Source of the DNA: Hyalangium minutum
GTDB taxonomy: Bacteria; Myxococcota; Myxococcia; Myxococcales; Myxococcaceae
Length of the DNA: 64,000 bases
Direction of reading: 5' to 3'
Assembly (NCBI RefSeq): GCF_000737315.1
Contig: NZ_JMCB01000014.1
Span: 248,001-312,000 of the forward strand
Each line of letters opens with the position of its first letter. Positions within the stretch are counted from its first letter, which is position 1. The notes under the pieces were generated by a model that was given only the letters and a program-made list of their open reading frames with translations, was not told the DNA's origin and did no database searches. Positions 5,300 through 63,399 of this stretch are shown here, one piece after another. The translations under genes were made by a program, and so were the position numbers.

Positions 5300-5476
5300 G
5301 GTACCCCGCGCTACCGTACGTCCGCGGAGCTGTACGATCCAGCCACGGGGACCTGGAGCCCCGCAGGCTCCATGGCCACGACGCGCGTTTACCCCACGAT
5401 GACCCTGTTGCCGAGCGGCAAGGTGCTCAGCATCGGGGGATCCAAGGACAACTCGGCGGAGCTGTACACACCGTAA
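5300..5476 (+). pseudogene. Orphan 3' fragment of a Kelch-repeat gene
   Basis: [51 protein letters not shown]-stop is about 1.3 Kelch blades. There is no matching 5' part upstream. Confidence 0.7.
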
Positions 5477-5572
5477 CGCGCCTGACGGGGGGCCATGGAG
5501 ACCGACCGGGTGTGCCATGATGCGCGCTCCAGGGGAGAACATGCACGAATCGTCTCAAGGAGAGGCCCTCCC

Positions 5573-6025
5573 ATGACCACTCGCAAGCCACTGCGCAAGC
5601 CTGCGCGAAAGTCCGCTCGCAAGCCCGCTCGCAAGCCCATCGTTCTCACCCCCGGTGGGGGGCGTCAGTATCCGATGGGAAGGATCAGCGCCGTGTTCAA
5701 GGCCGACTGCGACGAGACGGCGCAGGCCTACTCCATCTCCGAATGGTGGCTCGAGCCGAACACCCAGGGCCCCGGTGCGCACTCGCACCCGGAGGATGAT
5801 GTGTTCTTCGTCATCGAAGGCACGATGAGCATCCGGGTCGGGAAGAAGTGGATCGATGCGCCCCCCGGCTCCTTCGTGCTCGTGCCTGGCGGGGTGATCC
5901 ACGATTTCGAGAACCGGAGCCAAAAGCGCGCAGGGATGCTCAACTTCACCCCGGGCGTCTTCGAGCCCGAGATGGAGGGCATCGCCCAGTGGTTCAAGGA
6001 GCATCCCCCGGGTGATGCGCGCTAG
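5573..6025 (+). CDS. Cupin domain protein with basic N-terminal repeat
   Basis: Cupin motif GPGAHSHPEDDVFFVIEG...PGGVIHDFEN. AGGAG lies upstream of ATG 5573. Confidence 0.85.
   Translation: MTTRKPLRKPARKSARKPARKPIVLTPGGGRQYPMGRISAVFKADCDETAQAYSISEWWLEPNTQGPGAHSHPEDDVFFVIEGTMSIRVGKKWIDAPPGSFVLVPGGVIHDFENRSQKRAGMLNFTPGVFEPEMEGIAQWFKEHPPGDAR
5582..5641 (+). repeat. 5 x 12-bp tandem repeat (CGCAAGCCnnnn) encoding RKP(A/L)
   Basis: cgcaagccactg cgcaagcctgcg cgaaagtccgct cgcaagcccgct cgcaagcccatc. Confidence 0.75.
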
Positions 6026-12152: not shown

Positions 12153-12334
12153 CGCAGCTCACGAGGGGACTTCACCCGCCTAACACATACATACAAGGTG
12201 TCGCGCACCCACTCCTCGGCCTTTGCGGCCATGGCCCCGAAGCTACTACGGTGGTGTCGAGCCGGTACGTGGGGCATGGGGCGCCGTGAGCGCGCGCCCA
12301 GCCTGGTGGAATCACGCTCCTGAAGGCTCTGGGG

Positions 12335-13195
12335 TTAGTAGTTGAAGGCCACCGTCCCGCTGCAGAGCCCGGTGCCGTAGCACCCAGCGCGCACCACGTA
12401 CGTGCCCGTCACCGGCACGATGACGGAGAAGTTGGACAAAATGCCACAAGCGCCTTGCGAGTCGTCATTGGAGGCAATCTCCTGCCCGGACGGATTGAAC
12501 AACCGCAGGTACGTGTCTCCGGTGCCGGTGGAACCCGGCACTCCGCAGGTACCGAGGGTGAAGAGCTGGCCGGCGTACAGGTTGATCACGTAGTTGTAGG
12601 TGTTGGCCGTGGCGGAGGAGGTGTTCGAGGTGCTGTAGGAGAAGCTGCCGCGGTTGGCCGTGGGCTCCGGCCGGCGCTCGCAGATGAAGGAAAAGGTCTC
12701 GTCACACCGGAAGTCATTCCACTCCTCACTTTGGATGTTCTGGCTCGGGTTGGTGTACCGATCCACGGCGCAGTCCTCTTGCTGCAGGTAGTCATCGGGC
12801 TGGCCGGGGTACCAGTGGGTGTACGTGGACACGCCGTTGGCCCAGGCCCAAAGCCCCTCGAAGCCCTGATCCGTGTAGCCGATCCACACGTTGCGCATGT
12901 TGCGAGCCGCCTCCTGGGTCTGAAGGAAAGCCTCCTCGGCGCTGTCATCGATGGTGACCAGGTCATAGCCCTGAATGAGGCAGGCGCTGCGTGCCTCATT
13001 CCAGGTCTTGGGCGTGGTGACGAACAGGTAGTCGCCCCCGTTGTAGCTGATAGCCTGCTCGGTGGTGCCCAGTTTCACTTCCTCCTCGAACCCGGCCTCC
13101 AGTGGCGCTCCTCCACAGCCCACCAGGGGCGAGACCGTGAGGGCCAGCGTGCACAGCAGGGAGAAAGGCTTCTTGATGAGAGAGAACAACGGCAT
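12335..13195 (-). CDS. Lipoprotein with C-type lectin domain and C-terminal PPC-like domain
   Basis: LVGC lipobox; KTWNEARSAC...LVTIDD..E..FL, WIGYTD, W.PGQPDD...EDC, WND..C...FSFICE; then GDTYLRLF...ASNDD. GGAGG RBS upstream. Confidence 0.85.
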   Translation of the reverse strand: MPLFSLIKKPFSLLCTLALTVSPLVGCGGAPLEAGFEEEVKLGTTEQAISYNGGDYLFVTTPKTWNEARSACLIQGYDLVTIDDSAEEAFLQTQEAARNMRNVWIGYTDQGFEGLWAWANGVSTYTHWYPGQPDDYLQQEDCAVDRYTNPSQNIQSEEWNDFRCDETFSFICERRPEPTANRGSFSYSTSNTSSATANTYNYVINLYAGQLFTLGTCGVPGSTGTGDTYLRLFNPSGQEIASNDDSQGACGILSNFSVIVPVTGTYVVRAGCYGTGLCSGTVAFNY

Positions 13196-13555
13196 GGCAG
13201 TACCTCCTGTGTTTAAGAGCACCGTCAGTGGCGCCCTTGATGGAGCACACAGTGCCAGCCAGCGCGATGTGGCTCAGTGAGCCCGCCCACGCGAAAACGG
13301 TGAAACCGCTCACACCTGAGACTGGGCAAGCGCAGGCGGCCACGTCTCCTGCAGCCCAGCATTCTCACCGGACTCCAGTCCGCCCTGGGCGCTATCCTCC
13401 TGGCCACACCGGTGAAGGACAACCTCTCCACGCCATGAACACGAGAGCATGCTCATGAAGCCAGAACTGTTCGAGAAGATTGCTGACTCGCTGACCGCGT
13501 CCGCCAGACGACGATTCAATATCAGCTGATCCGACTATTTCGCGGCCTGTGGATT

Positions 13556-14101
13556 GTGTTTGAAAAGACGGGCACGAATTGGCGTGGGCTGATCAATGAC
13601 CTGCCAACGATGTTCGATGGGTTCAAACCAAGGCATCCTGAACTCGATGAAGAGAACCCAGAGGTGGTTCATAGGACCGCCAGGAAGTACGCCTTCTATG
13701 GCCGTCTATGGCTGGAGGAGCGTGGTCAGACCCAAAGCGACTGGGCGCATTTCAACAAGCTATCCCGATTGAAGGAGTTCGTTTCCATTGAAGGGACGGG
13801 AACCGGGATCGTCGTCGATTTCCATGATGAGAAGAAGCAGTATGCCCTGTGTTATTTCGATGGCAGGGCCAATCACCTGTTTCCCTTGAACCTCACCTTG
13901 GGGAAGTTCCTTGCCAGCTTCCTCTACTTCGACACGAGCCATGGTTGGTACTGCGCGTTTCTTTCGAAGCGGGATTTTCGGAAGTCCGGAGCGAGCGCAA
14001 AGGAGATCATCAAAGGCGGGAAGAAGGACTATGGCCGATGGGAGGTGTACGACAAGCCGATAGCGGATCTGTCGCGAAGGCTGAGCGCGCTCGAGGAATG
14101 A
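13556..14101 (+). CDS. Hypothetical protein of atypical (lower GC) composition; possibly SUKH/SMI1-like immunity protein
   Basis: 181-aa ORF from GTG with many A/T-ending codons. The C-terminal half (IVVDF...LCYFD...LFPLNLTLGKFL) loosely resembles SUKH folds. Family assignment is weak. Confidence 0.5.
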   Translation: MFEKTGTNWRGLINDLPTMFDGFKPRHPELDEENPEVVHRTARKYAFYGRLWLEERGQTQSDWAHFNKLSRLKEFVSIEGTGTGIVVDFHDEKKQYALCYFDGRANHLFPLNLTLGKFLASFLYFDTSHGWYCAFLSKRDFRKSGASAKEIIKGGKKDYGRWEVYDKPIADLSRRLSALEE

Positions 14102-14154
14102 CCGTATCCGAGTACGGGAACCGTTCGCGGCATTGAAATACAGGGTTGGGCCAC

Positions 14155-14265
14155 GCATAGGTGGAATAGAGGCCATGTTGAGGGCGAGGACTGGAGAGGA
14201 GGGGCCGAGGAGGGCAGCGGACAGGAGCGCAATCCCAGGTGCTCCAGAATCGATCGTACCCCGTG
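14155..14265 (-). mobile_element. IS91-like (rolling-circle) element 3' remnant: end of transposase plus oriIS-like terminus
   Basis: cccaggtgctccagaatcg (14234-14252) is identical to 52343-52361 (ILEHLG). 14155-14210 also aligns with 52079-52135 (gcatagg/gtatagg...atagaggccatgt.gaggg.gagg.ctggag). Confidence 0.65.
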
Positions 14266-14730
14266 GGGGCCTCGAGCACCGCCACGTCCATCACACCCTT
14301 GGACCGAAGCGCCTGGACCAGGGCGGCCAGCGCTTCCGGTGTGACGATCATGGAGGGATCGCCGTGGTGCACTCCGAGCATGAAGGACGTCTTCACCGCG
14401 GCCTCCGCTTCCCAGGAGGTGGCGCGCCTCCGCGGTCCTCTGATTCCAGGGCAGGAAACCCGGGTGAATCGCTCCAATCCTCCCGGCGAGCGCCTCGACG
14501 CTGAGGCCCTCTCTCAGACGATCATCGGCCGTGAGGGCGTCTGCCAACAACGCGAACAACTTCTCGTGCTGGACCTCGTCCTCGTGGACTCGCTCGAAGA
14601 GTTCGACACTGCCTGCTTCGATGCGGGCCTGCCGCCCCAGCGTCGCGAGCCGCTCCCAGGGGAGCGCGGCGGTCTTCTCCGCGTCGACATTGAACGCGTG
14701 AAAGGTTCGCCCGCAGCGGTACCGCAAACT
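14266..14730 (-). pseudogene. Fragmented ferritin-like/DUF362-type gene
   Basis: One frame gives ERVHEDEVQHEKLFALLADAL; another gives KTSFMLGVHHGDPSMIVTPEALAALVQALRSKGVMDVAVLEAP. No intact start or stop; fused to the IS91-like remnant. Confidence 0.5.
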
Positions 14731-14872
14731 CCATGCTCAGCTGTGGGCAGCCAAACGTTCAGGAAAGATGCAGGAAGACCTGTGGTCTCTGCGAGGATTA
14801 AGAGTGGAAACGATTCTCCAGAAACGCGGGCTTTCGATCGCGGGGACCGCGGGAAAGCCCCTCAACCTGAGA

Positions 14873-16183
14873 CTATTGCCCCAGAGCAGAGGCCTGGGTG
14901 CTGGAGGGGAGCTCGTTTCGGACCACGAGCCCTCCCTTCATCACGAACCGGACGCGCTGCAGCTCCGTCACATCCTCAAGCGGGGAGCCCGAGACGGCGA
15001 TCAGATCGGCGTACCTGCCCGGCTCCAGCGTGCCCACGTGTTCCTGGAGCCCGAGCAGCTCCGCGGCCCGCGAGGTGGCCGACCGGATCGCCTCGATGGG
15101 CGGGAGCCCGGCGCGCTGGAGCGCCACCACCTCCCAGGCGTTGCTCCCCTGGCCTGATGCCGAGCTTGCGTCGAAGCCGCTGACGATCTTCACGCCGAGC
15201 TTGTGCGCGAGCGCCACCTCTTTGCGCAGGGCCTGAAGCGTCTTGTCGCGGAACTGCCGCGCCTGGTCATTGGGAGCGTCCACCAAAGACAGCTCGAAGT
15301 AGCCAATGGTCGGGACGAGAAAGACTCCCTGCTTCTTCATCAGCTCCAGGGTGGCGCGATCCGCCTCATGCCCGTGTTCGATCGAGTCCACGCCGGCTGC
15401 CAGGGCGTTGCGGATGGCTTCGCTCGTCACGGCGTGGGCAGCCACCTTGCGGCCGGCCTTGTGCGCCTCCTCGACGACGGGGCGCATCTCGTCGACGGTG
15501 AGCGTGGGATGGTGCCAGTCCGCGTAGAGCTTGAGGAGATCGGCGCCATGGCCCAGCTGCTCCCGTGCCGCGCGGCGCGCCTCCTCGGCGCCACTGATGA
15601 GCTGCGCGCCGGTGGGGGGATCCTTGAGGTCGGGTGAGAGGCCGTTCGGATAGTAGGTGCCCACCGCGCCAATCCCTCGGGTGGACACCAGCATCCTGGG
15701 CCCTTCCACCAGCCCCTGGCGGATGGCATCTCGCAACGCGACATCCGCGTAGAAGGCCCCCTCGCTCTCGACATCCCGGACGGTGGTGAAGCCGGCGCGC
15801 AGCGTGGCCCGGGCGTTCGCCGCACCCTCCAGCGCACGAAACGCCTGGGACTTGGTGATCAGGTCCAGGGCATAGCCCTCGGGTGTCTCGGGCATCCGCG
15901 CCATCAGGTGCGTGTGGCCGTCAATCAGCCCCGGCAGCACGGTGGCTGCGCCGAGGTCGATCACCTCCGCCCCTTCAGGAACCGGCAGGCCGGGCCCCAC
16001 CGCCGAGATCCGCTCGTTCTCGATCACGATGACCGGGTTCTCGAGGAAGGTGCCGGCGCGGACATCGAGCAGCCGGGCCGCGCGGACGACCCGCGTCTTC
16101 TTGGGAGCGCTCTGCGGAACGGGCTGGGCCGCCGCGCTCCCGGCCAGGAGGAGCAACGACAACACCGTGACGAACTGGCTCAT
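14873..16183 (-). CDS. Secreted metal-dependent amidohydrolase (Xaa-Pro dipeptidase-like)
   Basis: Signal peptide; DLGAATVLPGLIDGHTH, KVAAHA, DSIEHG, GTLEPGRYADLIAV. GGAGG RBS upstream. Confidence 0.9.
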   Translation of the reverse strand: MSQFVTVLSLLLLAGSAAAQPVPQSAPKKTRVVRAARLLDVRAGTFLENPVIVIENERISAVGPGLPVPEGAEVIDLGAATVLPGLIDGHTHLMARMPETPEGYALDLITKSQAFRALEGAANARATLRAGFTTVRDVESEGAFYADVALRDAIRQGLVEGPRMLVSTRGIGAVGTYYPNGLSPDLKDPPTGAQLISGAEEARRAAREQLGHGADLLKLYADWHHPTLTVDEMRPVVEEAHKAGRKVAAHAVTSEAIRNALAAGVDSIEHGHEADRATLELMKKQGVFLVPTIGYFELSLVDAPNDQARQFRDKTLQALRKEVALAHKLGVKIVSGFDASSASGQGSNAWEVVALQRAGLPPIEAIRSATSRAAELLGLQEHVGTLEPGRYADLIAVSGSPLEDVTELQRVRFVMKGGLVVRNELPSSTQASALGQ

Positions 16184-16202
16184 GAGACCTCCGAGAGTGC
16201 GC

Positions 16203-16231
16203 TTGACACACTATTCACCGACAACAACAAT
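16203..16231 (+). promoter_or_regulatory. Sigma70-type promoter (TTGACA-N17-AACAAT), predicted leaderless start at ATG 16238
   Basis: TTGACA at 16203-16208, 17-bp spacer, AACAAT at 16226-16231. The ATG is 7 nt downstream with no SD sequence. Confidence 0.6.
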
Positions 16232-16237
16232 GAAAGC

Positions 16238-16813
16238 ATGAAAACGGTCAATGGCAACAAGAATAAGCTGTCACCCGCGCAGCGTGAAGAGCTGCTCGGA
16301 GCATTGAAAGCCCGTTTCGAGAAGAACATGAAGCGCCACAAAGGTCTTGAATGGGCCAAAGTCCAAGCAAGGCTGGAAGCCAATCCTGGGAAGCTGTGGT
16401 CACTCCATGAAATGGAGAGGACGGGGGGCGAACCGGATGTCGTGGGCTATGACAAGAAGACGGGCGAGTGCATCTTCTATGATTGTTCGGAGGAGAGCCC
16501 CAAAGGCCGCAGAAGTGTTTGTTACGACCGTGAAAGTCTGGACTCCAGGAAGGAACACAAACCCGAAAACAACGCCATGAACATGGCAGCTGCCATGGGC
16601 ATTGAGCTTCTAACGGAAGAGCAATATCGGGAATTGCAGCAGCTTGGAGAGTTCGACACGAAGACGTCGAGCTGGGTGCAAACACCCCCTGAGATTAGAA
16701 AGCTCGGCGGTGCTCTCTTCTGTGATCGCCGCTATGACACTGTCTTCGTGTATCACAACGGCGCCCCCTCTTATTATGCCGCCAGGGGGTTCCGAGGCTC
16801 GCTCAAGATCTAA
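16238..16813 (+). CDS. DUF4256 domain protein
   Basis: LKARFEKNMKRH.GLEW..V..RL, MERTGGEPDVV, ESPKGRRSVCYD, TKTSSWV.TP..IRKLGGALFCDRRY..VFVYHNGA.SYYAARGFRG. Lower GC than the flanks. Confidence 0.9.
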   Translation: MKTVNGNKNKLSPAQREELLGALKARFEKNMKRHKGLEWAKVQARLEANPGKLWSLHEMERTGGEPDVVGYDKKTGECIFYDCSEESPKGRRSVCYDRESLDSRKEHKPENNAMNMAAAMGIELLTEEQYRELQQLGEFDTKTSSWVQTPPEIRKLGGALFCDRRYDTVFVYHNGAPSYYAARGFRGSLKI

Positions 16814-16839
16814 ACGCGGAGGAGGGGACGGAGCGGCCC

Positions 16840-17169
16840 TCAACTTCCCCAGATCTCACCCCTGGGACTCGCCGCGACGCGGACAACGGCCTCACAGAAG
16901 GCCACCGCGGCGGCTTCGCAGGACTCCAGCGAGCCCGTGAGCCAAGCGGACGCGAAGTTCGTCTCCGAGGGGGGCGGGAAGATCTTCACCACGCTCACGT
17001 CCGCCTCCTTCAGCGCCATGGCGAAGCCGATGGTGGCCTCCATGGGCGGCGCCACCAGGTAGGCCATGGGAGCGCCCACGGAGAGCCCCGCCGCGGCGCT
17101 CAGGTAGTGGCCCAGCGAGGCGATCACGTGCGGAAAGACAGCGGTCTTCTTCGCCTCGTCCGCGTCCAC
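16840..17169 (-). pseudogene. eutL: C-terminal half of ethanolamine microcompartment shell protein EutL (5'-truncated)
   Basis: [15 protein letters not shown]...[22 protein letters not shown]......[28 protein letters not shown] matches the EutL second BMC domain. The 5' half is replaced by transposase sequence. Confidence 0.75.
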
Positions 17170-17400
17170 TGCCGGTAGGGCACGTGCGGCAGCACCTGCT
17201 CCACCAGGTGCACTGTTCGCTCGCCTCCTCCACCAGCGTGGCTAGGTTGTCCCTCGCCGCCTCGTACAGCACCGTCCCCTCCGGCCGCCTGCGCCGGTAC
17301 TCCCACCCGTGTTCCCCCACCTGCCCCTCCCCAGCCACACCTCGCTAGGGCACAGATTACGGGTGGGCTCCCACGGAACTTCGCCAAGCCCACCTTTGGA
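17160..17400 (-). mobile_element. IS91-like element 5' remnant (terIS-like hairpin plus internally deleted transposase N-terminus)
   Basis: [30 protein letters not shown] is joined to [15 protein letters not shown]. Inverted repeat GGTGGGCT/AGCCCACC at 17362-17394. Confidence 0.7.
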
Positions 17401-17416: not shown

Positions 17417-18274
17417 TCAGATCCGGAAGAGGACCCGCACGCCGCCCATGAGCCAGAAGTGGAAGGCCTTGTTCGGGATCTCGCCGGACAGCCCCTCCTC
17501 CTCACCGGGCTCGCCACCGATACCGCCGAGATCGCCCAGATCGAGGCTCAGGTGCGAGTACTGCCCCACGGTGAAGTTTGCGTAGGGGCCCACCCACAAG
17601 GACTTGCCGATCCGGAAGTCGACGCCGCCCTGGAGGTTCGCGAACTCGAACCCGCGGAGACTCTGGCCGACCTTGAAGGTGATGCCTTCGATCTTCGACG
17701 AGACGTTGACGTTCAACATCTCGTACCCGATCCCCAGGCCCATCCAGGGGCTCAGCTTGCCCTCCGGCGTGAAGGAGTAAGCGGCATTGAGGCCGAACCG
17801 AAGCTGGCTGGCACTGCAGTCTGCGGGGGCGGGGCACTCCTGGCCGAACATCATCAGCCCGTACTGAAAGAAGCCGCCCACGTAGAGGCGGGAGTCGATG
17901 AAGTATCCGACGTCGAGCTGCGCTGGGAAGCCGCCGCTGACGAGGTCGCTCAGCGCGGGCGACACCTCTCCAGCGTCTTCCCCTAAGCCCAGCTTGCCGA
18001 AAGGCAACCCGAATCCGAGGCGCGCCCCGACGGCGACGCCTGAGCCCGCAGCGCCGTCTTCACCCTCGGACTCCGACGCTTCCTCCGCATCCGAAGACGT
18101 TGCGTCTTCCTCGCTCGTGCTCTTCTTCTTCGAGTCCTTCTCGTAATCGTCGTCGTAGCCGGAGGCCTTCTTGGGCTTGTTCCGGAACCCGTCGTTCCTG
18201 TTCCAGTCGGCCATCGCAGCAGAGGGGAGGAAGACGGACAGCGAGAGGAGAATCGAGAGGATGCGAGCGAGCAT
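17417..18274 (-). CDS. Outer-membrane beta-barrel protein (OmpA-like transmembrane barrel) with acidic linker
   Basis: Signal peptide, D/E/S-rich linker, amphipathic strands (GARLGFGLPFG, QLRFGLNAAYSF, WMGLGIGYE), terminal VRVLFRI. Confidence 0.75.
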   Translation of the reverse strand: MLARILSILLSLSVFLPSAAMADWNRNDGFRNKPKKASGYDDDYEKDSKKKSTSEEDATSSDAEEASESEGEDGAAGSGVAVGARLGFGLPFGKLGLGEDAGEVSPALSDLVSGGFPAQLDVGYFIDSRLYVGGFFQYGLMMFGQECPAPADCSASQLRFGLNAAYSFTPEGKLSPWMGLGIGYEMLNVNVSSKIEGITFKVGQSLRGFEFANLQGGVDFRIGKSLWVGPYANFTVGQYSHLSLDLGDLGGIGGEPGEEEGLSGEIPNKAFHFWLMGGVRVLFRI

Positions 18275-18411: not shown

Positions 18412-18717
18412 TCATCCCTCTTCCTGGTCCAGGTACGTGCCATTGGTGGAGTTCAAGTCCCTCACGTGGAAGCATGCCTCGTGCCGGGTCACCTGCAGGT
18501 GGCGGCTGGAGACGAACCGGTCCTGGATGACCAGCGCGTTGCCAGGATCCGTCAAGTCTTCCAGCACCCAGCGCGCGCCCTCCTGCCTCAGCGCCGCGTG
18601 ATGGCGGCTCACGTGGGGATCCGGAATGACGATGTCATTGTCCTCGGCGCGGCCGAGCCCCGGCGAAAGAACACAAGCTCTGGCATGTTCAATCCTGTTG
18701 CTGCGCACTCTATCCAT
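18412..18717 (-). pseudogene. Fused FHA-domain fragments
   Basis: LGRAEDNDIVIPDPHVSRHHA...WVLEDL is joined to a second partial FHA, VSSRHLQV...VRDLNSTNGTYL. Confidence 0.6.
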
Positions 18718-19939
18718 CCGAGGCGTTCAGCAGCCCCGCATCGTTGATCTTTCCCAGGCCCTTCACCGGGGTCGAGCTGTCCGCGACGACGTCATACAGC
18801 ACGAGCCCGCCAAACGTGTCCACGAGCAGCGTCCGTCCATCCTCGCTGATGTCGAGCACACGGATCACCGATTCAATCGCCAGCTCGCGGGTCGCATCGC
18901 GATCCAGATCGTACTCGTACAGACGAACGGGGGTGTAGTGAGGAACACCCTCGCGGAAATACACGGTCCGCCGGAGCGGGCTCGCCGCGTCGAAGGAGTC
19001 GTGAGAGCTGCACATTCCCTAGTGAAGTCGCCAGACCCGCTCCTGGCCGGTGCTCAACTCGACGCGCCGGTAGGTCGAGGAATCGGGCCCCTCGCAGTCG
19101 GTCCCGCGCGTGCCTTCGCGATAGAACAGCATCGTGTCCCCGAGCACCACGGGCGTCAGCATCCCGAGGCGGACCTGCCGCAAGGGAGGGCCGACCTGCC
19201 ACGGCTTCTTGCCCGCCCTGTCCAACGTGGCGAGACGGACGCCACGGCTGGGATGCCTCAGCACGGTGCGCGGCTCACCGTTGACCAGCATGTTGCCCGC
19301 GGTGTCGGTCAGGCCGCGAGGGAGCACGCGAATGCCCTCGGGCCGCGGGCCGAAGTTCCAACTCCACCACTCGTACAGGGTCGAATCTGCCACGGAGACG
19401 AGCACGCGCGAGCCGTCCGGCGTGAACTGCTCGGGGAACTGAGGGAAGAAGCGCGCCCCCTGCGTCCATGTCTCCGACCACGTCTCCAGCATGCCGGGGG
19501 TGATGGCCACGATTCCGTTGAGGTCTCCGAGGACGAGGAAGGTGCCGCCCTTGGCACGTCCGGCCTTGCTGGTGGGCACGGCGAGCTCGCGACCCGACAC
19601 CACGAAGCTCACCAGACGGCTCGAGGGGATATCGCTGTCCCCTGTGACGTCTGCGGATGCCGCCCAGCGTCCTGTCTGCGGGTGCACGGCGAGCCCGAAG
19701 AAGCTGCACGGCTTCGACTCGCGCACGATCTTGCCCCGCTCAGGACCTCCGAGCATGCGCTTATCGATGGTCTGTCGGCAGTCCGCGAGGATTCGTGGGC
19801 CGTCCATTCCCACGTAGACGACACTCCCCTCCTGGGCGACGATCATCGGCACGGGCGACACGGGGGTTTCGGCCCACGCCACGGTCGCAGACGTGGCCAA
19901 CAGGGCGAGCAGCACGGTGGCGCGATAAGCGTTGAGCAT
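18710..19939 (-). pseudogene. Secreted beta-rich protein interrupted by an in-frame TAG at 19019-19021
   Basis: Signal peptide at 19939. ORFs 19019..19939 and 18710..19015 are in the same frame (...RLH-TAG-GGA-ATG-CSSHD...). Confidence 0.6.
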
Positions 19940-20085
19940 GCCGCAGAGGACGGACGCATCCAGCCGGTATTCACGCGCAGTGAGACAGCCGGGTCAGCCG
20001 CTCTCCACGCGTGTCGCATTCATTCAAGCGCGTCCCCTCCCTCCTTCTTACGCTCCGCACGAGAGAACGAAAGGAGCAGAGGGTC

Positions 20086-20394
20086 ATGTCGAGTCGAGCA
20101 CCGGTCGGCGGCACGCTTTCCATTGAGGTCCATCTCCGCGCCGAGGCGGCCTCCAGCCTCAAGGCCGTGGGCCACAGGCTGGACCGTCAGCTCACAGCGC
20201 TGCGGGAGTTGGGAGCACAGATGCAAGCGATGCCACTCGGAGCCGCGCGTGAGAAGAGGGTCGCCGAGTACGACGAGAAGCGGCGTGAAGCGGAGTACCT
20301 CAAGTGGACCCTCATCGTTCAACGCGAGGCGATGGGCCTCGCCCACCACGAGGACGTGCACGAGCTCTACCGCGTTCCGCCCAAGCTGAGCTGA
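20086..20394 (+). CDS. Small conserved-type myxobacterial hypothetical protein
   Basis: AAGGAG RBS upstream; helical; ends W.LIVQREAMGLAHHEDVHELYRVPP. Confidence 0.6.
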   Translation: MSSRAPVGGTLSIEVHLRAEAASSLKAVGHRLDRQLTALRELGAQMQAMPLGAAREKRVAEYDEKRREAEYLKWTLIVQREAMGLAHHEDVHELYRVPPKLS

Positions 20395-20539
20395 GGGCGG
20401 CCCTGCCAAAGGGCATGCGCCGAGCCCCCCTCCTCCCCTCGCATCGTCCTACCCACAAAGTCTCTGGACTTTGCCCAATGCACCGGATTGGATCCCACCC
20501 CTGACAGCAGGCGGGGCTCAGAGGAGCCCGGGGGGAGAC

Positions 20540-23500
20540 ATGCGGCAGGTTCTTGGGTGGGGAATGGTAGTGGCCCTGTGCTGTGCGGCCAGTGCGGTGG
20601 GCGCGCAGCAGCCGGATGCGCGGCTACAGGAAGCGCAGACGGCCTATGACGAGGCGATAACGCTCAACAAGGCGGGCAAGTACGCCGAGGCTGTGGCGCG
20701 GGGTGAGCGTGCGCTCGGCCTGCGGGAGGCGGTTCTCGGGGGCACGCATCCAGAGGTCGCCACGTGTCTGGATCTGCTCGGCGGGGTGCACCTGCAGCAG
20801 GGGAACTTCGCCCAGGCCGAGCCACTGCTTCAACGCGGGCTGACCCTTCGGGAAGCGGCGCTCGGCAAGGACCATCCCGACGTTGCCCAATCGCTCTACA
20901 ACCTCGCCAATCTCTACGTGGCCCAGGGAATGAGGGGCCGTGCCGAGCCGCTCTACCAGCGCTCGCTCGCCATTCGGGAAGCGGCGCTCGGCAAGGACCA
21001 TCCCGACGTTGCCCAATCGCTCACCAGTCTCGCCAACCTCTACAGGGATCTGGGGAAGTACGCTCAGGCCGAGCCGCTCTACCTGCGCGCGGTCGCCATT
21101 CGGGAGGCGGCCCTTGGTAAGAACCATCTCGACGTTGCCCAATCGCTCAACAGCTTCGCCACGCTCTACAAGCTCCAGGGGAAGTACACACAGTCCGAGT
21201 CGCTCTACCAGCGTGCGCTCGCCATTCGGGAAGCGGCCCTCAGCAAGAATCACCCCTCCATCGCTGCCTCGCTCAACAACCTCGCCATCCTCTATGTGGA
21301 GCAGGGGATGTACGGCCGCGCCGAGCCGCTCTACCAGCGCGCGCTCGCCCTCATGGAAGAGACCTTCGGCAAGAACCACCCTGCCGTCGCCAGCGCGCTG
21401 AACAACCTCGCCGAGCTCTACAGGCTCCAAGGGAAGTACGCTCAGGCCGAGCCGCTCTACCAGCGTGCGCTCGCCATTCGGGAGGCGGCGCTTGGCAAGG
21501 ACCATCCCAACGTCGCCGATTCGCTCAACGACCTCGCCCATCTCTACCAACGTCAGGGAATGTACGGCCGGGCCAAGCCGCTCTTCGAACGCGCGCTCAC
21601 CATTCGGGAAGCGAGCCTTGGCAAGGACCATCCCGACGTTGCCAAATCGCTCAACAACCTGGGCAACCTCTACAGGGAGCAGGGGATATACGACCGGGCC
21701 GAGCCGCTCTACCAGCGCGCGATCGCCATCAAGGAGGCGGCCCTCGGCCAGAATCATCCCAGTCTCGCCTTCTCGCTCCACGGCCTCGCCATCCTCTATG
21801 CGGAGCAGGGGATGTACGGCCGCGCCGAGCCGCTCTACCAGCGCGCGCTCGCCATGCGGGAAGCGACCCTGGGCAAGGACCATCCTGATGTCGCCGCCTC
21901 GCTCTACGATCTCGCCAGCCTCTACAAGACCCGGGGGATGTACGACCAGGCCGAGCCGCTCTACCAGCGCGCGCTCGCCATTGAGGAAGCGGCTGTCGGC
22001 AAGACCCACCCTGACGTCGCCAGAACGCTCACCGGCCTCGCCCTCCTCTACGGGGAACAGGGGATGCACGACCGGGCCAAGCCGCTCTTCGAACGCGCGC
22101 TCGCCATTTTTGAAGCGGTGCTCGGTCAGAATCCTTCCGAAGCCGTCACCGCTCCCGCAGTCGTCGCTTCGCTCACTGGCCTGGCCAACCTCTACCAGGA
22201 GCAGGGGATGTACGACCGGGCCGAGTCGCTCCACAAGCGCGCGCTGGCCATCGTGGAAGCAGTCCTCGGCAAGAACCACCCCGATGTTGTCAGCGCTCTC
22301 AACCGCATCGCCTTACTCAGGCTGGCCCAGAATCGTCTCGGCGCCGCCGTTCCGCTGTTCACCCGCGCTTTTGCCGTGTCCGAGCGGCGCCTGCGCCACG
22401 AGGCCCTTGATCTCTCCGAGGCGCGCCTGGCCAGCTTTCTCCAGCTGCTGCGCACCGACGAGGAACGCATCTATGCGCTGCTGCACGCGCATCCTGATGA
22501 CGCCCGCGTGAGACGGCTGGCCCTGGGCGCCGCGTTGCTGCTCAAAGGCCGCTCCGCGGAGGAGACGGCCGACATCTCCCGCTCCGTCTACCGGAGCCTG
22601 GGAGCCCAGGAGCGCGACACCTTCGAGCGGTTGCGCGGGCTGCGCACCCAACTGGCCACGCTGTCGCTCCAAGGCCCTGGCTCGCTGACACCCACCGCCT
22701 ACCAACAACACCTCAAAGAGCTCTCCGAGCAGGGTGATGCGCTCGAAGCGGGCCTGGCCAGGCGCTCGGCCCCCCTGCGCGCGCTGGCCGCACTGCCGCC
22801 TCCCGGCGAGATTGTGGACCGTGTCGCCCAAGCCCTGCCCAGAGATGGCGCCCTCATCGAGTTCATCACCTATGAGGACCGTCCGCTGGTGCCCAAACCC
22901 GGTACACCGCAGGAACAGCTCAAGGGACAGCTGCGCTACCTGGCGCTGGTGCTCTTGCCAGACGCCACCATTCGCGTCCGGGATCTCGGCCCCGCCGAGC
23001 CGATGGATGTGGCCGCCACGCGCCTGAGAGACGCGCTGGCCAACCGGGACACTGCCTTCCAAACCCACGCTCAGGCGCTCTACCAGCAGGCGTTCCAACC
23101 GCTGCTTCCGCTGTTAGGGAAGACGCGCCGTCTCTTCCTCTCCCCGGATGGACAGCTGGCCCTGGTGCCGTTTGCCGCCCTGCACGATGGAGAGCAGTTC
23201 CTCGTGGAGCGCTTCGATTTCAGCTACCTCACCTCCGGCAAGGATCTGCTGCCTCGCCCCCTGGAGGGAGCCCCCGCGACCTCCGTGGTCGTCCTGGCCG
23301 ATCCGGACTTCAGCGCCCCGTTGCCAACACCCGCTCCCTCGATGGAAGCGCCTTCAGCGCAGGCCTACCGCTCCAGCTCTCTCGAGCGCTTCTTCTCCAG
23401 GCTGAGCGAGGAGCCGACGCAGCGAGCATGGGCGCCTGTGCCATTGCCAGGCACCCGCCAGGAGGCCGAAGCCATCCAGCGTCTGGTGCCCCAGGCTCAG

Positions 23501-24148: not shown

Positions 24149-24182
24149 CCCTCGGTCCCGCCTCATACATAAGGCAGCGGTA

Positions 24183-24204
24183 GGTTCGATTGCCGCCGCT
24201 TCCA
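24183..24204 (+). repeat. 22-bp tRNA/tmRNA 3'-end-like sequence (att-like), exact direct repeat of 51900-51921
   Basis: GGTTCGATTGCCGCCGCTTCCA is identical at both sites and contains the T-loop TTCGATT. Confidence 0.65.
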
Positions 24205-24211
24205 TCCCGAG

Positions 24212-24249
24212 AAGCCCAGCAATCTTGACGGGTTGCTGGGCTTTTCTTT
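24212..24249 (+). terminator. Intrinsic terminator
   Basis: AAGCCCAGCAA / TTGCTGGGCTT 11-bp stem, 10-nt loop, then TTTTCTTT. Lies between convergent genes. Confidence 0.7.
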
Positions 24250-24340: not shown

Positions 24341-26122
24341 TCAATGATTGCCCGTCCAAACAACGGCCCGCTCATCGGCGGGATTGATGCCCACGACGTC
24401 GGCCCCGCCGCCTCCAGTGACGTCCGCCACGCGGAACTGGTAGCCCGAATAGTTGTATGGCCCGTTCAGCCATTCCACACCACCGCTGAAGCTGCCGCCT
24501 GTGCTCGCCCACACAACGGCCCGCTCATCGGCGGCACTGATGCCCACCACCTCGGCCCTGCCGTCTCCAGTGACGTCCGCCACGTGGAATTGGTAGCCCG
24601 AGTAGTTGTATGGCCCGTTCAGCCATTCCACACCACCGCTGAAGCTGCCGCCTGTGCTCGCCCACACAACGGCCCGCTCATCGGCGGGACTGATGCCCAC
24701 CACCTCGGCCCTGCCGTCTCTATTAACGTCTGCCACGTGAAATTGATAGCCCGAGTAGTTGTATGGCCCGTTCAGCCATTCCACACCACCGCTGAAGCTG
24801 CCGCCTGTGCTCGCCCACACAACGGCCCGCTCATCGGCGGCACTGATGCCCACCACCTCGGCCCTGCCGTCTCCAGTGACGTCCGCCACGTGGAATTGGT
24901 AGCCCGAGTAGTTGTATGGCCCGTTCAGCCATTCCACACCACCGCTGAAGCCGCCGCCTGTGCTCGCCCACACAACGGCCCGTTCATCGGCGGGATTGAT
25001 GCCCACCACGTCGGCCCTGCCGTCTCCATTAACGTCTGCCACGTGGAACTGATAGCCCGAATAATTGTATGGCCCGTTCAGCCATTCCACACCACCGCTG
25101 AAGCCGCCGCCTGTGCTCGCCCACACAACGGCCCGTTCATCGGCGGGATTGATGCCCACCACCTCAGCCCTACCGTCTCCAGTGACGTCCGCCACGTGGA
25201 ACTGGTAGCCCGAATAATTGTATGGCCCGTTCAGCCATTCCACACCACCGTTGAAAAGAAAGGCAGAGCGGGAGTAGAGAGCACGTACACCCTGCGCATC
25301 AAGATTGGTGATCGACAGATCTGAGGTGAGAACGCCGTTGCACCATGGGTAATGCATCACTGAACTCGCGTCGTAGGTTGTCAGGGCTCTCCAAGAGCTA
25401 TCCTCGTAGCAGTCGACGCGGATGTGCTCGTGACGGAAGCCCAGGACGTGGCCGAGTTCGTGGCGGAGGACTCCGAGCGTAGTAACGTTAGGAGCGTTCT
25501 GCCGATAGAAGGGATTGGTGTCCAGATCCGTCATGTCAATAACAATGGTCCGTGGGACGCACCCACCGCCGGAGGGGAAGAATGCGCATGCCCCCCCACC
25601 TGACCAAGGACGAACAGAGAAAGTCGTCGCGGCATTGCCGTTGTGACAGTTAGCATCATGGGTCGGGTCATAAATGAAATCGACGTCAGCCACGGCTTCC
25701 CACGCGCTGGTTGCTTGACTCATTTCAAAAACAGCGCGTGACTTACGGGCGCCAAACTCATTGCTCACGCAGTATCGTAAGTTGCGCCGCAACGTGCCAT
25801 TCCATATGTCGTCCTGGGAGTTCACGCGATTCACAATGAGCGGTTGCTGCAAAGTGCCGGAAAGATCGCTTGGCACTTCGGCTGCAACGTTTCGCTCGTA
25901 GTAGTCACGCAGTTCTTCGTGGGTGAGCGGTAAATCCCCTTCAACCACAAAGGACAGGGTCCCCTCGAAGCTGCGCGTGGAGTCACGTTCAAACTCTTCC
26001 CAAGAAGGAGGAGTCTTTCTTTCCTCGACAGAACCGCAGCCCGCAGCCCCCAAGATGAGGACTCCAGCCATGGTCATGAACTTGGCAGTTGCATTGAAAG
26101 GCACTCTGATTTTTGGGTTCAT
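24341..26122 (-). CDS. Lipoprotein M57/matrixin-like zinc metalloprotease with six FG-GAP-like repeats
   Basis: AAGC lipobox; FVVEGDL prodomain; HELGHVLGFRHEH metzincin motif; YDASSVMHYP Met-turn; six 51-aa repeats. Start taken at ATG 26122 (AGGA upstream). Confidence 0.9.
   Translation of the reverse strand: MNPKIRVPFNATAKFMTMAGVLILGAAGCGSVEERKTPPSWEEFERDSTRSFEGTLSFVVEGDLPLTHEELRDYYERNVAAEVPSDLSGTLQQPLIVNRVNSQDDIWNGTLRRNLRYCVSNEFGARKSRAVFEMSQATSAWEAVADVDFIYDPTHDANCHNGNAATTFSVRPWSGGGACAFFPSGGGCVPRTIVIDMTDLDTNPFYRQNAPNVTTLGVLRHELGHVLGFRHEHIRVDCYEDSSWRALTTYDASSVMHYPWCNGVLTSDLSITNLDAQGVRALYSRSAFLFNGGVEWLNGPYNYSGYQFHVADVTGDGRAEVVGINPADERAVVWASTGGGFSGGVEWLNGPYNYSGYQFHVADVNGDGRADVVGINPADERAVVWASTGGGFSGGVEWLNGPYNYSGYQFHVADVTGDGRAEVVGISAADERAVVWASTGGSFSGGVEWLNGPYNYSGYQFHVADVNRDGRAEVVGISPADERAVVWASTGGSFSGGVEWLNGPYNYSGYQFHVADVTGDGRAEVVGISAADERAVVWASTGGSFSGGVEWLNGPYNYSGYQFRVADVTGGGGADVVGINPADERAVVWTGNH
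24344..25255 (-). repeat. Six near-identical 153-bp coding tandem repeats
   Basis: Unit FSGGVEWLNGPYNYSGYQFHVADV.GDGRA.VVGI..ADERAVVWASTGG.; 153-bp period (e.g. 24461 vs 24614). Confidence 0.9.
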
Positions 26123-51209: not shown

Positions 51210-51425
51210 GGTGGGCTCGCTCCACGCACCCCCTCCCCAGACGAGGTGGGCCATTGCAGCTGCCGCTGGAAGTGGTGGCCCAGCATCTTCCGCTAGGGCG
51301 GCCTTCCTGGCGGCCCGCGTCACGGAGAAAAAATGTGGGGCGACCGATGACTTTTCCCACGGCGAGGAGTCTGAGCTTGAGAACCTCATGGGGTGGGCGT
51401 GGGCTCACCTGAAAGGAAGCAAGCC

Positions 51426-51845
51426 ATGACGATCCTGACTGCGACTCCCTACCTCATCCTCAACGGCGCCGCCGCGCGCGCCATCCCCTTCTATGAGCAG
51501 GCGCTGGGAGCCAAGACCACGGCGATGCAGCGCTTCGGCGACGTGAACCAGAGCTGTCCCGAGGCACAGAAGCACCTGGTGATGCACGCGGAGCTCCGCG
51601 TGGGAGAAGCCCGGGTGATGATGAGCGATGGCCCGGGCGAAGGCGCTCTGCCGGTGGGCGGCGCCGTGAGTATCGCGCTGAACTTCAGTGATGCCGCCCA
51701 GCTTCGGCGCTCCTTCGATGCGCTCGCCGCCCAGGGCAAGGTCATCCAGCCGGTCATCGATGCGCCTTGGGGTGACGTGTTCGGCGTGGTCAGCGATCAG
51801 TTCGGCGTGAACTGGATGGTGACCGCACCGATTCCCAAGAGCTGA
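51426..51845 (+). CDS. VOC/PhnB-family protein
   Basis: PYLILNG.A..AI.FYEQALG, VMHAEL, PWGDVFGVVSDQFGVNWM. Confidence 0.9.
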   Translation: MTILTATPYLILNGAAARAIPFYEQALGAKTTAMQRFGDVNQSCPEAQKHLVMHAELRVGEARVMMSDGPGEGALPVGGAVSIALNFSDAAQLRRSFDALAAQGKVIQPVIDAPWGDVFGVVSDQFGVNWMVTAPIPKS

Positions 51846-51847
51846 GT

Positions 51848-51921
51848 GGAAGCCGCGCTCGACACAGTGAGCGCACTCTCGCCAGAAGCTCGGGCGGCGG
51901 GTTCGATTGCCGCCGCTTCCA
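51848..51921 (+). other. Degenerate tRNA-like cloverleaf (pseudo-tRNA / att-associated)
   Basis: GGAAGC pairs with GCTTCC plus A73. GCTC/GAGC sit at tRNA positions 10-13/22-25. T-arm is GCGGG-TTCGATT-GCCGC. The anticodon arm pairs poorly and no CCA is encoded. Confidence 0.4.
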
Positions 51922-51946
51922 AGTAGAGCAACCCGCCGCTCTCAAG

Positions 51947-51985
51947 GCGCCGCCCTCTAAGAACGGGGGCGGCGCTCGCATTTTT
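51947..51985 (+). terminator. Possible intrinsic terminator
   Basis: GCGCCGCCC / GGGCGGCGC stem; the T5 run is offset by 5 nt. Confidence 0.4.
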
Positions 51986-52078
51986 GGGACCCAATCCGGT
52001 TTTTGGGACCCCAAAAGGACCAAACTGGAGACGGAAACGACATGAGCAAGACGTGGATCGGCAAGTGGAAGCGTATGC

Positions 52079-52545
52079 GTATAGGCGGGATAGAGGCCAT
52101 GTGGAGGGTGAGGGCTGGAGCGGAGGTGCCCTGGAGGACCGCTGACGGGGGCCGCCCGAGCAGTGAGCCAAGCGGGTGGAGAAGCCGCGCAGCCCCTTCG
52201 AGTACACGCCGGCCCTGGCCGCCCTCCCATGAGGTGCGCGGCAGGGGCTTGGTTCTCTTGGCCCTGGCGGCTTGAGCCTCAACACCCCGCGGCCTGAGGG
52301 GGCTCGCGCGCTGGGGCCAGCCTCACACCTGCCGTGGGCAGGCCCAGGTGCTCCAGAATCGCTCGCACTCCTCCCGCCTCGTTCACGTACGCCAGCACTC
52401 GCCGTCTACCTCCACACCTCACGCAGGCGAACACCTCGAAGTCGAACGTCCTGCTGAGCAACTCGGCCCAGTCTACTCGCGGCCTCTTCTCCATCAGCGG
52501 CTCCTTGCTGGCCGCTGCCTGAGGCGAAGCCAGAGTCGCCATTCA
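52079..52545 (-). mobile_element. IS91-like transposase C-terminus and downstream end (oriIS-like CCTATAC)
   Basis: RVDWAELLSRTFDFEVFACVRCGGRRRVLAYVNEAGGVRAILEHLGLP...PPQAAGC-stop. The minus-strand terminus CCTATAC lies at 52079-52085. Confidence 0.75.
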
Positions 52546-52814
52546 CCTCTGACACGTCACACCGCCGATGATGCGGGCGCTGCCACCTCTACAACGCCGG
52601 TGATCAGGCGGCCGCCGTCCCCTACGGACGGAGGTGGACGTCCGGCTCCCTCCCCGAAAACAGCCCCAGTGCGCCTCCCTGGAGGGCATCTCCCTGCGCG
52701 CCAATACACACCTGCCTGCCAAGACAGGCAGGGACTGGGATGAGGCTGACGTTCCGCACTGCGAGCCGCTGCATGCGGGACACGCTCCCGTCGGTTCCTG
52801 CTAAGGGGTTCTCC

Positions 52815-63305: not shown

Positions 63306-63399
63306 CCGCTCGGAGTCTCGGAGGTGCGAGAGCCTTGAGACATGCGCCGCTGCAGGTGGGGGGCCAGATGCCTCAACGTTAAGACACGGGGTCCGCGCC

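What the first reader, a model, noticed from the sequence alone, without database searches (positions are those of the whole stretch)
14155..17400. Candidate cargo-carrying rolling-circle (IS91-like) element: transposase interior replaced by captured genes
Seen in sequence, reading the minus strand: a hairpin (17362-17394) and the transposase N-terminus ([13 protein letters not shown]...[15 protein letters not shown]) are fused through a GTGGAC overlap to half of eutL. Then come intact DUF4256 and amidohydrolase genes, then ferritin/DUF362 fragments. These are fused to the transposase C-terminus (GVRSILEHLGL) and an end sequence that matches the oriIS-like end at 52079. The two transposase pieces are co-oriented and in the native order. 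Established: in IS91/ISCR elements terIS is upstream and oriIS downstream of tnp, and these elements mobilise adjacent DNA by rolling-circle read-through. Inference: this is a ~3.2-kb non-autonomous Pack-type/Helitron-like unit that shuffles genes and fragments in myxobacteria.
Basis: partly seen in the sequence, partly recalled or inferred. Interest (0 to 1): 0.72.

Follow-up and report, generated by a model that had tools for sequence, protein, structure and literature searches.

The report
Decayed rolling-circle transposon relic enclosing foreign genes
Pieces of both ends of an IS91/ISCR-type rolling-circle transposon in Hyalangium minutum flank 2.9 kb of unrelated genes, but the element lacks its true start signal and looks like a dead, patched-up relic in a variable hot spot, not a proven gene-shuffling vehicle.

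Summary
Read on the minus strand, 14154-17397 holds four short pieces of an ISCR/IS91-like element, in native order and one orientation. Mapped onto near-full-length relative L095 they are nt 103-277, 466-517, 1471-1504 and 1691-1765. Between them lie 2.9 kb of foreign DNA:
- the 3' half of a Hyalangium-type eutL
- an intact DUF4256 gene, on the plus strand
- an intact amidohydrolase gene
- 0.6 kb I could not assign ("ferritin" not confirmed, DUF362 only weak)

The 3' terminus at 14154 is the family's exact oriIS-side end, also seen in nine other copies with eight unrelated flanks.

The 17362-17394 hairpin is not the element's end. The family's real 5' terminus is a 13-bp-stem palindrome about 105 nt further upstream, and it is absent here.

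Two related strains lack the whole 12194-17399 stretch and each carries different genes there. So there is no clean empty site, and the variable block is larger than the proposed unit. No second copy of the cargo was found.

The family does produce multi-copy mini derivatives, and two other loci show the same end-cargo-end layout.

Best reading: one decayed copy whose interior was replaced by illegitimate recombination, now immobile. A Pack/Helitron-like carrier remains possible (about 0.15).

The parts
17362..17394 (-). Hairpin GGTGGGCT...AGCCCACC. It is a conserved internal 5'-UTR feature of subfamily I, not the element terminus.
   Evidence: Fold. Family alignment puts the true terminal palindrome about 105 nt further upstream in L085, L084, L114, L116 and L117.
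17217..17397 (-). 5' segment of the ISCR/IS91-like element: truncated 5' UTR plus the first ~45 transposase codons (..[31 protein letters not shown]). It starts directly after the conserved flank of the OMP gene.
   Evidence: blastn: 92% to L085, 91% to L084, 85% to L095 nt 103-277. tblastn. Flank boundary.
17162..17213 (-). Second transposase piece ([16 protein letters not shown]), following a precise 188-nt internal deletion.
   Evidence: 98% to L095 nt 466-517. tblastn.
16835..17163 (-). 3' half of eutL (codons ~116-222, stop, plus 5 nt), joined to the transposase piece with a 2-nt overlap.
16238..16813 (+). Intact DUF4256 gene, low GC (0.53-0.56), on the opposite strand.
   Evidence: Pfam. 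Composition.
14873..16183 (-). Intact secreted amidohydrolase (Xaa-Pro-dipeptidase-like). DNA homology to orthologs covers only 14893-16192.
14263..14872 (-).
   Evidence: No Pfam or PDB support for ferritin. DUF362 E 0.069 only.
14229..14262 (-). Transposase C-terminal piece (GVRSILEHLGL), about L095 nt 1471-1504.
   Evidence: Repeat D13..
14154..14228 (-). 3'-terminal 75 nt of the element (oriIS-side end), ending ...TTCCACCTATGCG at 14154.
   Evidence: Repeat D14. Same terminus in nine other copies with eight unrelated flanks. 96% identical to the L109 mini over 77 nt, starting at the same base.
12194..17399 (.). Strain-variable block between the OMP gene (17417-18274) and the GDSL lipase gene. 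Relatives L002 and L003 carry 1.07 and 1.4 kb of unrelated DNA here.

Best explanation
The locus is the decayed remnant of one copy of an ISCR/IS91-family rolling-circle element. This family is abundant in Hyalangium, Archangium, Stigmatella, Corallococcus and relatives, mostly as deletion derivatives. The remnant sits in a strain-variable hot spot just downstream of an outer-membrane-protein gene in Hyalangium minutum DSM 14724.

SHOWN
- The 3' (oriIS-side) terminus is intact to the base.
- The 5' part begins about 105 nt inside the element, so the terminal terIS palindrome is gone.
- Only 338 nt of element sequence survive, as four collinear patches.
- About 950 nt of the transposase gene are replaced by 2.9 kb of discrete, tightly packed modules: a eutL 3' half, DUF4256, an amidohydrolase, and 0.6 kb unknown.
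- The one junction that could be resolved has only 2 nt of overlap.

INFERRED
- The interior was replaced by illegitimate (microhomology-level) recombination or template switching.
- In its present form the unit cannot complete normal rolling-circle transposition.
- It persists as neutral DNA carrying accessory genes.
- Whether the patchwork arose in place or before arrival cannot be decided from the data.
For: - Source genome.
- Collinear transposase patches mapped on near-full-length relatives L095 and L091. Those relatives carry Zn_Tnp_IS91 + Y2_Tnp domains and score best to the ISCR clade Ia model.
- Exact 3' terminus.
- Missing terminal palindrome.
- A 5'-only relic cannot be made by rolling-circle transposition, which starts at oriIS (PMC13181058, PMC3189936). 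So it once had a 3' partner downstream. The collinear 3' relic 2.9 kb away is the most economical candidate.
- Patchy internal deletions are typical of this family: L109, L087 copy A, L102, L085.
- eutL' is 88.5% identical to a native Hyalangium eutBCL operon gene, with an abrupt junction.
- Amidohydrolase orthologs at 80-86% protein identity sit in unrelated contexts, with no IS relics nearby.
- The block is absent from two relatives.
Against: - No direct evidence links the two ends to one original copy.
- The 3' terminal module is closest to L109 (96%), whose 5' UTR belongs to another subfamily. The subfamily-I minis have a different 3' type.
- Relics are dense here: at least five in 64 kb. 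Chance juxtaposition is therefore not negligible, roughly 0.07 by density.
- The 5' boundary lies immediately 5' of a palindrome. That could instead reflect rolling-circle termination at a pseudo-terIS.
Confidence: 0.5

Rival explanations
1. The 3.2-kb unit is, or recently was, a non-autonomous cargo-carrying rolling-circle element. A family transposase acting in trans moved it here as a unit, starting at oriIS (14154) and terminating at the secondary hairpin (17394) as a pseudo-terIS.
For: - Ends-only IS91 derivatives carrying a marker do transpose in trans; 89 bp of left end plus 82 bp of right end is sufficient (PMC13181058).
- IS801 often terminates at non-canonical sites (PMC3189936).
- Minis with one shared deletion junction sit in four or more contexts.
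- A 75-77-nt terminal module is retained from the same base in the window and in L109.
- L099 and L087 copies C/B show the same end-cargo-end layout.
- The 5' boundary coincides with the strain-specific junction and abuts a palindrome.
- L084 carries an extra 870-bp insert inside a mini.
Against: - The canonical terIS palindrome is absent.
- No other copy of the cargo was found by exact protein look-up or in 117 fetched loci.
- The variable block extends 2 kb beyond the 3' end, and there is no empty site.
- No other family copy ends at this hairpin.
- The best transposase genes recovered are themselves defective or incomplete. L091 has a stop codon and L095 a frameshift. L090 is open but cut by the contig end.
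Confidence: 0.15
2. Two independent relics. One is a 5' stump of an old copy. The other is a separately inserted right-end fragment, of the kind made by prematurely terminated one-ended transposition. They happen to flank ordinary accessory genes in a junkyard hot spot.
For: - Solo right-end relics are very common: 188 small ORFs in the 83-aa family.
- Solo 5' relics with no 3' partner within 4-8 kb occur in L086, L094, L096 and L116.
- Relics cluster and lie in both orientations in L087, L100, L102 and in the window at 52 kb.
- IS801 produces right-end fragments in 26% of events (PMC3189936).
- Related strain L003 has its own weak, diverged C-terminal relic at the same hot spot.
Against: - It needs more events than one copy plus replacement.
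- All three solo 5' relics that have a nearby 3' relic have it collinear: the window, L099 and L087 copy C. Chance of this is 1/8.
- The 3' relic here is not a continuous right-end fragment; it has a 186-nt internal deletion.
Confidence: 0.25
3. The transposase similarities are chance matches of short peptides in GC-rich DNA.
For: Each piece is short (11-58 codons), and Pfam and NCBIfam do not score them.
Against: DNA identity is 85-98% over 52-177 nt to elements from other genera and metagenomes. The pieces are collinear and share the exact family terminus.
Confidence: 0.01

Closest known systems
IS91 family (IS91, IS801, IS1294) rolling-circle insertion sequences
   Same: Full-length relatives encode a Zn_Tnp_IS91 + Y2_Tnp HUH transposase. 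The two ends are unlike each other. The 5' end is a terminal palindrome. There is no target duplication. Abundant right-end fragments fit prematurely terminated one-ended transposition.
   Different: No conserved CTTG/GTTC tetranucleotide sits next to the 3' terminus in 8 distinct flanks. No significant palindrome is predicted in the last 85 nt of the 3' end. At this locus no catalytic domain and no terIS remain. Cargo lies inside the element, not beyond terIS.
ISCR elements (e.g. ISCR1, ISCR2)
   Same: ISCR clade Ia is the best-scoring NCBIfam model, though below its cut-off. Both are associated with mosaics of unrelated genes and truncated ends.
   Different: ISCR cargo is adjacent to the element, next to a complete transposase gene. 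ISCR cargo is antibiotic-resistance genes in proteobacteria; here it is housekeeping or accessory genes in a myxobacterium. ISCR transposition itself had not been shown experimentally as of 2018 (PMC6218425).
IS801 miniature right-end fragments and read-through products in Pseudomonas syringae (PMC3189936)
   Same: This explains the many solo 3' relics with recurrent 5' boundaries, and shows that non-canonical termination is frequent. That paper also concluded that most genomic fragments are reorganisations, not transposition products.
   Different: Those fragments are continuous from the right end and carry no internal cargo. The window's 3' piece is discontinuous and is paired with a 5' piece.
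Laboratory mini-IS91 (terIS-CmR-oriIS) mobilised in trans (PMC13181058)
   Same: Same architecture in principle: ends only, foreign gene between them.
   Different: It needs the terIS cleavage region, which is missing here. It is an engineered construct, not a natural element.
Eukaryotic non-autonomous Helitrons and Pack-MULEs
   Same: A patchwork of host gene fragments and whole genes between retained element ends. The family has many non-autonomous copies.
   Different: Different transposase lineage. Gene capture here is not shown to be element-mediated, and copies with this cargo are not amplified.

Membership tests
IS91/ISCR family insertion sequence | Encodes an HUH Y2 transposase (Zn_Tnp_IS91 + Y2_Tnp domains). 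| tested here: not met
   Only about 84 codons survive, in three pieces, and the catalytic domain is absent. Relatives L090 and L091 do have both domains. So this locus derives from a family member but is not an autonomous one.
IS91/ISCR family insertion sequence | Conserved oriIS-side (3') terminus downstream of the transposase gene. | tested here: met
   The terminus ...CCACCTATGCG at 14154 is the same as in nine other copies with eight unrelated flanks.
IS91/ISCR family insertion sequence | terIS: a subterminal palindrome next to the cleavage site at the 5' end. | tested here: not met
   The family terminus TGGAGGCGGCGGGAATCGAACCCGCCGCCTCCA lies about 105 nt upstream of the point where this copy begins. 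The only copy in the window is at 51894-51917.
IS91/ISCR family insertion sequence | Target tetranucleotide (CTTG/GTTC) adjacent to oriIS. | tested here: not met
   The flank here starts TGGC. The 8 distinct flanks start with C or T and share no tetranucleotide.
IS91/ISCR family insertion sequence | No target-site duplication. | tested here: met
   The flanks ...GTCTTCC (17398 and up) and TGGCCCAAC (14153 and down) share no repeat.
IS91/ISCR family insertion sequence | Transposition through single-stranded circles with an oriIS-terIS junction. | not testable with these tools
   This needs PCR or a mating-out assay.
Non-autonomous cargo-carrying (Pack-type) element | Both functional ends retained. 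| tested here: not met
   The 3' end is intact and the 5' terminal palindrome is absent.
Non-autonomous cargo-carrying (Pack-type) element | Further copies with the same ends and junctions at other sites. | tested here: inconclusive
   The exact cargo proteins occur only on this contig. There is no cargo DNA in 117 fetched loci. The rest of the H. minutum genome could not be searched at DNA level.
Non-autonomous cargo-carrying (Pack-type) element | Insertion polymorphism with a precise empty site. | tested here: not met
   Relatives differ over 12194-17399 and carry other genes there.
Non-autonomous cargo-carrying (Pack-type) element | Cargo derived from host genes. | tested here: met
   eutL' is 88.5% identical to Hyalangium eutL. 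The amidohydrolase is 80-86% identical in protein to myxobacterial orthologs.
IS801-type right-end miniature fragment | Continuous stretch from the right terminus to an internal termination site. | tested here: not met
   14154-14262 has a 186-nt internal deletion relative to the 52-kb copy and to L087 copy A. The 52078-52526 copy does fit this definition.

The most novel reading that the evidence does not exclude
An ISCR-like family in Cystobacterineae spawns non-autonomous derivatives that take up host gene fragments and whole genes between their retained ends and move them. That would be a bacterial counterpart of Helitron or Pack-MULE gene capture. This locus, L099 and L087 copies C/B would be examples, and termination at secondary palindromes would explain the truncated 5' ends.
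Probability: 0.13. Interest if true: 0.72.

Novelty: new member of a known kind. Interest (0 to 1): 0.35.

Why it matters
If the conservative reading holds, this is ordinary genome decay. It does document three things:
- An undescribed, abundant ISCR-like family in myxobacteria, seen mostly as mini derivatives. Its small ORFs are mislabelled 'ATP-dependent helicase HrpA' in public databases.
- A well-defined pair of family termini.
- A hyper-variable integration hot spot.

If the carrier reading holds, it would be the first natural case of a bacterial rolling-circle element carrying captured genes inside itself. That would bear on how the very large, mosaic genomes of myxobacteria shuffle accessory genes.

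Tried and rejected
- Native context of the amidohydrolase and DUF4256. A scan of species-representative genomes gave 80 loci. DNA homology stops at the gene borders in every genus, and none has DUF4256, eutL', IS relics or the window's flanks nearby. No native context could be defined.
- Empty site. The only close relatives are two Logan contigs, and both have other DNA at the site.
- Ferritin and DUF362 assignments. Pfam at E <= 10 and a PDB sequence search found nothing.
- The sequence module upstream of 5' ends. It looked tRNA-like (T-arm plus terminator), but ARAGORN and Rfam find no tRNA or tmRNA. It is better read as the terIS palindrome plus adjoining sequence.
- Cargo as defence genes. 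PADLOC gave nothing relevant.
- Chance similarity. Rejected from DNA identities of 85-98% to foreign copies.
- Subfamily test of the two ends. L095 combines a subfamily-I 5' end with a type-A 3' UTR, so the window's combination is neither concordant nor discordant.
Full report
SOURCE AND SETTING

The window is from Hyalangium minutum DSM 14724 (GCA_000737315.1, contig JMCB01000014.1), identified by exact look-up of the amidohydrolase. The finding lies between an outer-membrane beta-barrel protein gene (17417-18274, minus strand) and, further left, three genes: a 181-aa gene of unknown function (13556-14101, GC 0.53), a C-type lectin gene (12335-13222) and a GDSL lipase gene.

CHECKING THE OBSERVATION

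- The hairpin at 17362-17394 exists: -9.5 kcal/mol, z = -2.1.
- On the minus strand, two reading frames carry [28 protein letters not shown] and [16 protein letters not shown]. Both match the N-terminal region of full-length IS91/ISCR-type transposases.
- The next ORF is the C-terminal half of EutL: NCBIfam model positions 112-212 of 214, E 8e-36; E. coli EutL structure residues 116-215, E 2e-29.
- DUF4256 is intact (Pfam E 9e-95) but lies on the plus strand (16238-16813). The amidohydrolase (14873-16183, minus) is intact.
- GVRSILEHLGL (14229-14262) and the following 75 nt (14154-14228) repeat the copy at 52078-52371, at 85% and 80%.
- The 'ferritin' fragment has no support in Pfam or the PDB even at E <= 10. 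DUF362 reaches only E 0.069.

THE ELEMENT FAMILY

- The 87-aa ORF at 52279-52542 is the C-terminus of an ISCR-like transposase (NCBIfam ISCR clade Ia, positions 438-490 of 509).
- It belongs to a family of at least 188 small ORFs, 72-83 aa long. They occur in Stigmatella, Archangium, Cystobacter, Myxococcus, Corallococcus and Hyalangium, several per genome. Public sources usually name them 'ATP-dependent helicase HrpA'.
- N-terminal relics also exist as small ORFs.
- A metagenome scan gave 30 more loci.
- L095 is near full length with one frameshift. L091 has a single in-frame stop. L090 is open up to the contig end. These carry Zn_Tnp_IS91 and Y2_Tnp domains and score best to the ISCR clade Ia model, below its cut-off.

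MAPPING THE WINDOW ON L095

| Window (minus strand) | L095 position | Identity |
|---|---|---|
| 17391-17217 | 103-277 | 85% (92% to mini element L085) |
| 17213-17162 | 466-517 | 98% |
| 14262-14229 | about 1471-1504 | - |
| 14228-14154 | last 75 nt of the element | - |

Sources. Only 338 nt of element sequence survive. They form four collinear patches enclosing 2899 nt of unrelated DNA.

THE TRUE ENDS OF THE FAMILY

3' end:
- Ten copies end at ...CATGGCCTCTATYCCGCCTATRCG and diverge immediately afterwards into eight unrelated flanks. Window 14154 is one of them.
- The window's last 77 nt are 96% identical to those of the patchwork mini element in L109, and they begin at the same base.
- IS91 needs only 82 bp of its right end (PMC13181058), so a retained ~75-nt module is plausible as a minimal origin.

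5' end:
- In an alignment of 25 copies, sequences become unrelated upstream of the palindrome TGGAGGCGGCGGGAATCGAACCCGCCGCCTCCA. This is seen in L116, L117, L089, L105, L108 and L106.
- That fits the IS91-family definition of terIS: a subterminal palindrome next to the cleavage site (PMC13181058).
- In the window's subfamily (L084, L085, L114, L116, L117) the palindrome lies about 105 nt upstream of the GTGGGCT...AGCCCAC hairpin.
- The window copy begins at that hairpin and lacks the palindrome. The only good copy in 64 kb is at 51894-51917.

RELATIVES AND THE 'EMPTY SITE'

- Two Logan contigs carry the OMP at 93% and 90% identity.
- Their homology to the window stops 11-19 nt after the OMP stop codon (window 17400/17406) and resumes at 12193/12226, next to the lipase gene.
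- In between they carry 1.07 kb (L002, a secreted Endonuclease_NS_2 protein) and 1.4 kb (L003). These inserts are unrelated to each other and to the window's 5.2 kb.
- The amidohydrolase and DUF4256 are therefore not syntenic in relatives. But the strain-specific block is 2 kb longer than the proposed element, and no empty site exists.
- L003 has its own weak, diverged C-terminal relic (37% over 35 aa) in the same orientation.

THE CARGO

- eutL': its protein clusters at 90% or more with full-length EutL of Hyalangium.
- In a Hyalangium MAG, eutL closes a eutB-eutC-eutL operon. Its nt 5346-5674 match window 17163-16835 at 88.5%, ending 5 nt after the stop codon.
- A three-way alignment with L095 places the transposase/eutL junction at 17162/17163 with a 2-nt (GC) overlap, not GTGGAC.
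- Amidohydrolase: orthologs at 80-86% protein identity occur in H. versicolor, Archangium lansingense and MAGs. DNA homology is confined to 14893-16192, every genus has different flanks, and no IS relics are nearby.
- DUF4256: low GC (0.53-0.56). It fills the space between the two modules almost exactly.
- The exact proteins of all three occur only on this contig in the 15-billion-protein collection. The cargo DNA has no match in any fetched locus.

FAMILY BEHAVIOUR RELEVANT TO THE HYPOTHESIS

- A mini element with the same deletion junction (L095 nt 268 joined to 1401) occurs in L084/L103, L085, L107 and L111, each with different flanks. This argues that ends-only derivatives have been mobilised.
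- L084 carries an extra 870-bp insert inside that mini.
- L087 copy A, L102 and L109 are other patchwork deletion derivatives.
- Two loci repeat the window's layout. L099 has a 5' relic, a 1360-aa gene, and a 3' relic 4.3 kb on. L087 has 5' relic C, then LysR, a GMC-oxidoreductase fragment and an Amidohydro_3 gene, then 3' relic B, over 3.4 kb.
- Against this, solo 5' relics without a 3' partner within 4-8 kb are at least as common (L086, L094, L096, L116). Relics also cluster in both orientations (L087, L100, L102, window at 52 kb).
- 3' ends are sometimes followed head-to-tail by the terIS region of another copy (window 52078 followed by 52008-51848; L089; L087 copy B; L100).

MECHANISM

Established knowledge:
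- IS91-family transposition starts at oriIS, runs through the transposase gene and ends at terIS.
- Failure to terminate captures DNA beyond terIS.
- Premature termination gives right-end fragments, 26% of IS801 events.
- Ends-only constructs move in trans.

(Sources: PMC13181058, PMC3189936.)

None of these processes places cargo inside the transposase gene. A 5'-only relic also cannot arise by transposition, so the 17-kb stump once had a 3' partner downstream.

The most economical reading is one copy whose interior was replaced through illegitimate joins. The supporting points are the 2-nt overlap, the modules trimmed to gene borders, and the patchy deletions typical of the family. The 5' terminus was then lost, so the unit is now immobile. 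I give this 0.5.

Two independent relics in a junkyard hot spot: 0.25.

It is not excluded, because the 5' boundary coincides with the strain junction and sits immediately 5' of a palindrome.

VERDICT

The locus is a new, degenerate member of a known kind (IS91/ISCR). The family-level picture is of moderate specialist interest: abundant mini derivatives, defined ends, mislabelled ORFs and a variable hot spot.

Noticed in passing
window 52078-52542 (minus) and 51848-52008: Second relic: an 87-aa C-terminal transposase ORF plus a complete 3' end. About 70 nt later comes the terIS palindrome region of another copy, head-to-tail, cut off at the stop codon of the 150-aa gene 51393-51845.
   Followed up: partly
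window 52626-52738 (plus): Inverted 113-nt fragment from the middle of the transposase gene (..LEGISLRANTHL..), 89% to L095 nt 932-1045. It lies next to the minus-strand relic and overlaps the start of the histidine-kinase ORF 52740-53924.
   Followed up: no
window 63389-63598 (minus): Third, strongly degenerate C-terminal relic (..GLLRRTLALDVFASPGC..), 78% to L091 over 78 nt.
   Followed up: no
83-aa ORF family (P0002-P0120): At least 188 small ORFs are C-terminal stubs of this transposase. They occur several per genome across Cystobacterineae and are named 'ATP-dependent helicase HrpA' in NCBI and UniRef. This looks like a propagated misannotation. Many share the same 5' boundary at ..PQAG.., as expected for prematurely terminated one-ended transposition.
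   Followed up: partly
window 12194-17399 versus L002 2288-3362 and L003 2293-3700: The OMP-lipase interval is a hot spot: three strains carry three unrelated contents. L002 encodes a secreted Endonuclease_NS_2 protein and L003 a low-GC 274-aa protein. The window adds a lectin gene and a low-GC 181-aa gene. These may be toxin/immunity-like cassettes.
   Followed up: partly
window 18713-20444: Further indels beside the OMP gene. L002 lacks about 18713-19966 and L003 lacks about 18814-20444, a stretch that includes the 306-aa gene 19019-19939.
   Followed up: no
window 14893-16192; L004-L010: The amidohydrolase gene behaves as a 1.3-kb module. It is 76-89% identical in DNA across seven genomes, but homology stops within about 10-50 nt of the start codon and near the stop codon. 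Flanks are unrelated everywhere except between two Pyxidicoccus species.
   Followed up: partly
L084 5828-6699; L109 4440-4825; L085 1580-2201: Mini derivatives of the family. L085 fuses about 30 N-terminal codons in frame to about 50 C-terminal codons. L084 is the same mini with an 870-bp insert of unknown origin. L109 is a 385-bp patchwork of four transposase-gene snippets.
   Followed up: partly
L094, L099, L111 (upstream of the 5' block): These three copies share a different upstream sequence (..GGGCGGGACTTCCACCCGCTGGTCAAGTGCACCTTCACGG..) in place of the usual 5' UTR. It may be co-mobilised upstream DNA or another end variant.
   Followed up: no
window 20674-22318, 24349-25260, 60767-62914: Long in-frame tandem repeats inside large ORFs: 126-nt units x ~12 (TPR-like), 153-nt units x 5 at 91-94% identity, and 144-nt units x ~12.
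   Followed up: no
window 24176-24217: A weaker copy of the terIS-like palindrome (GGAAGCGGCGGCAATCGAACCTACCGC) with no transposase remnant beside it.
   Followed up: no
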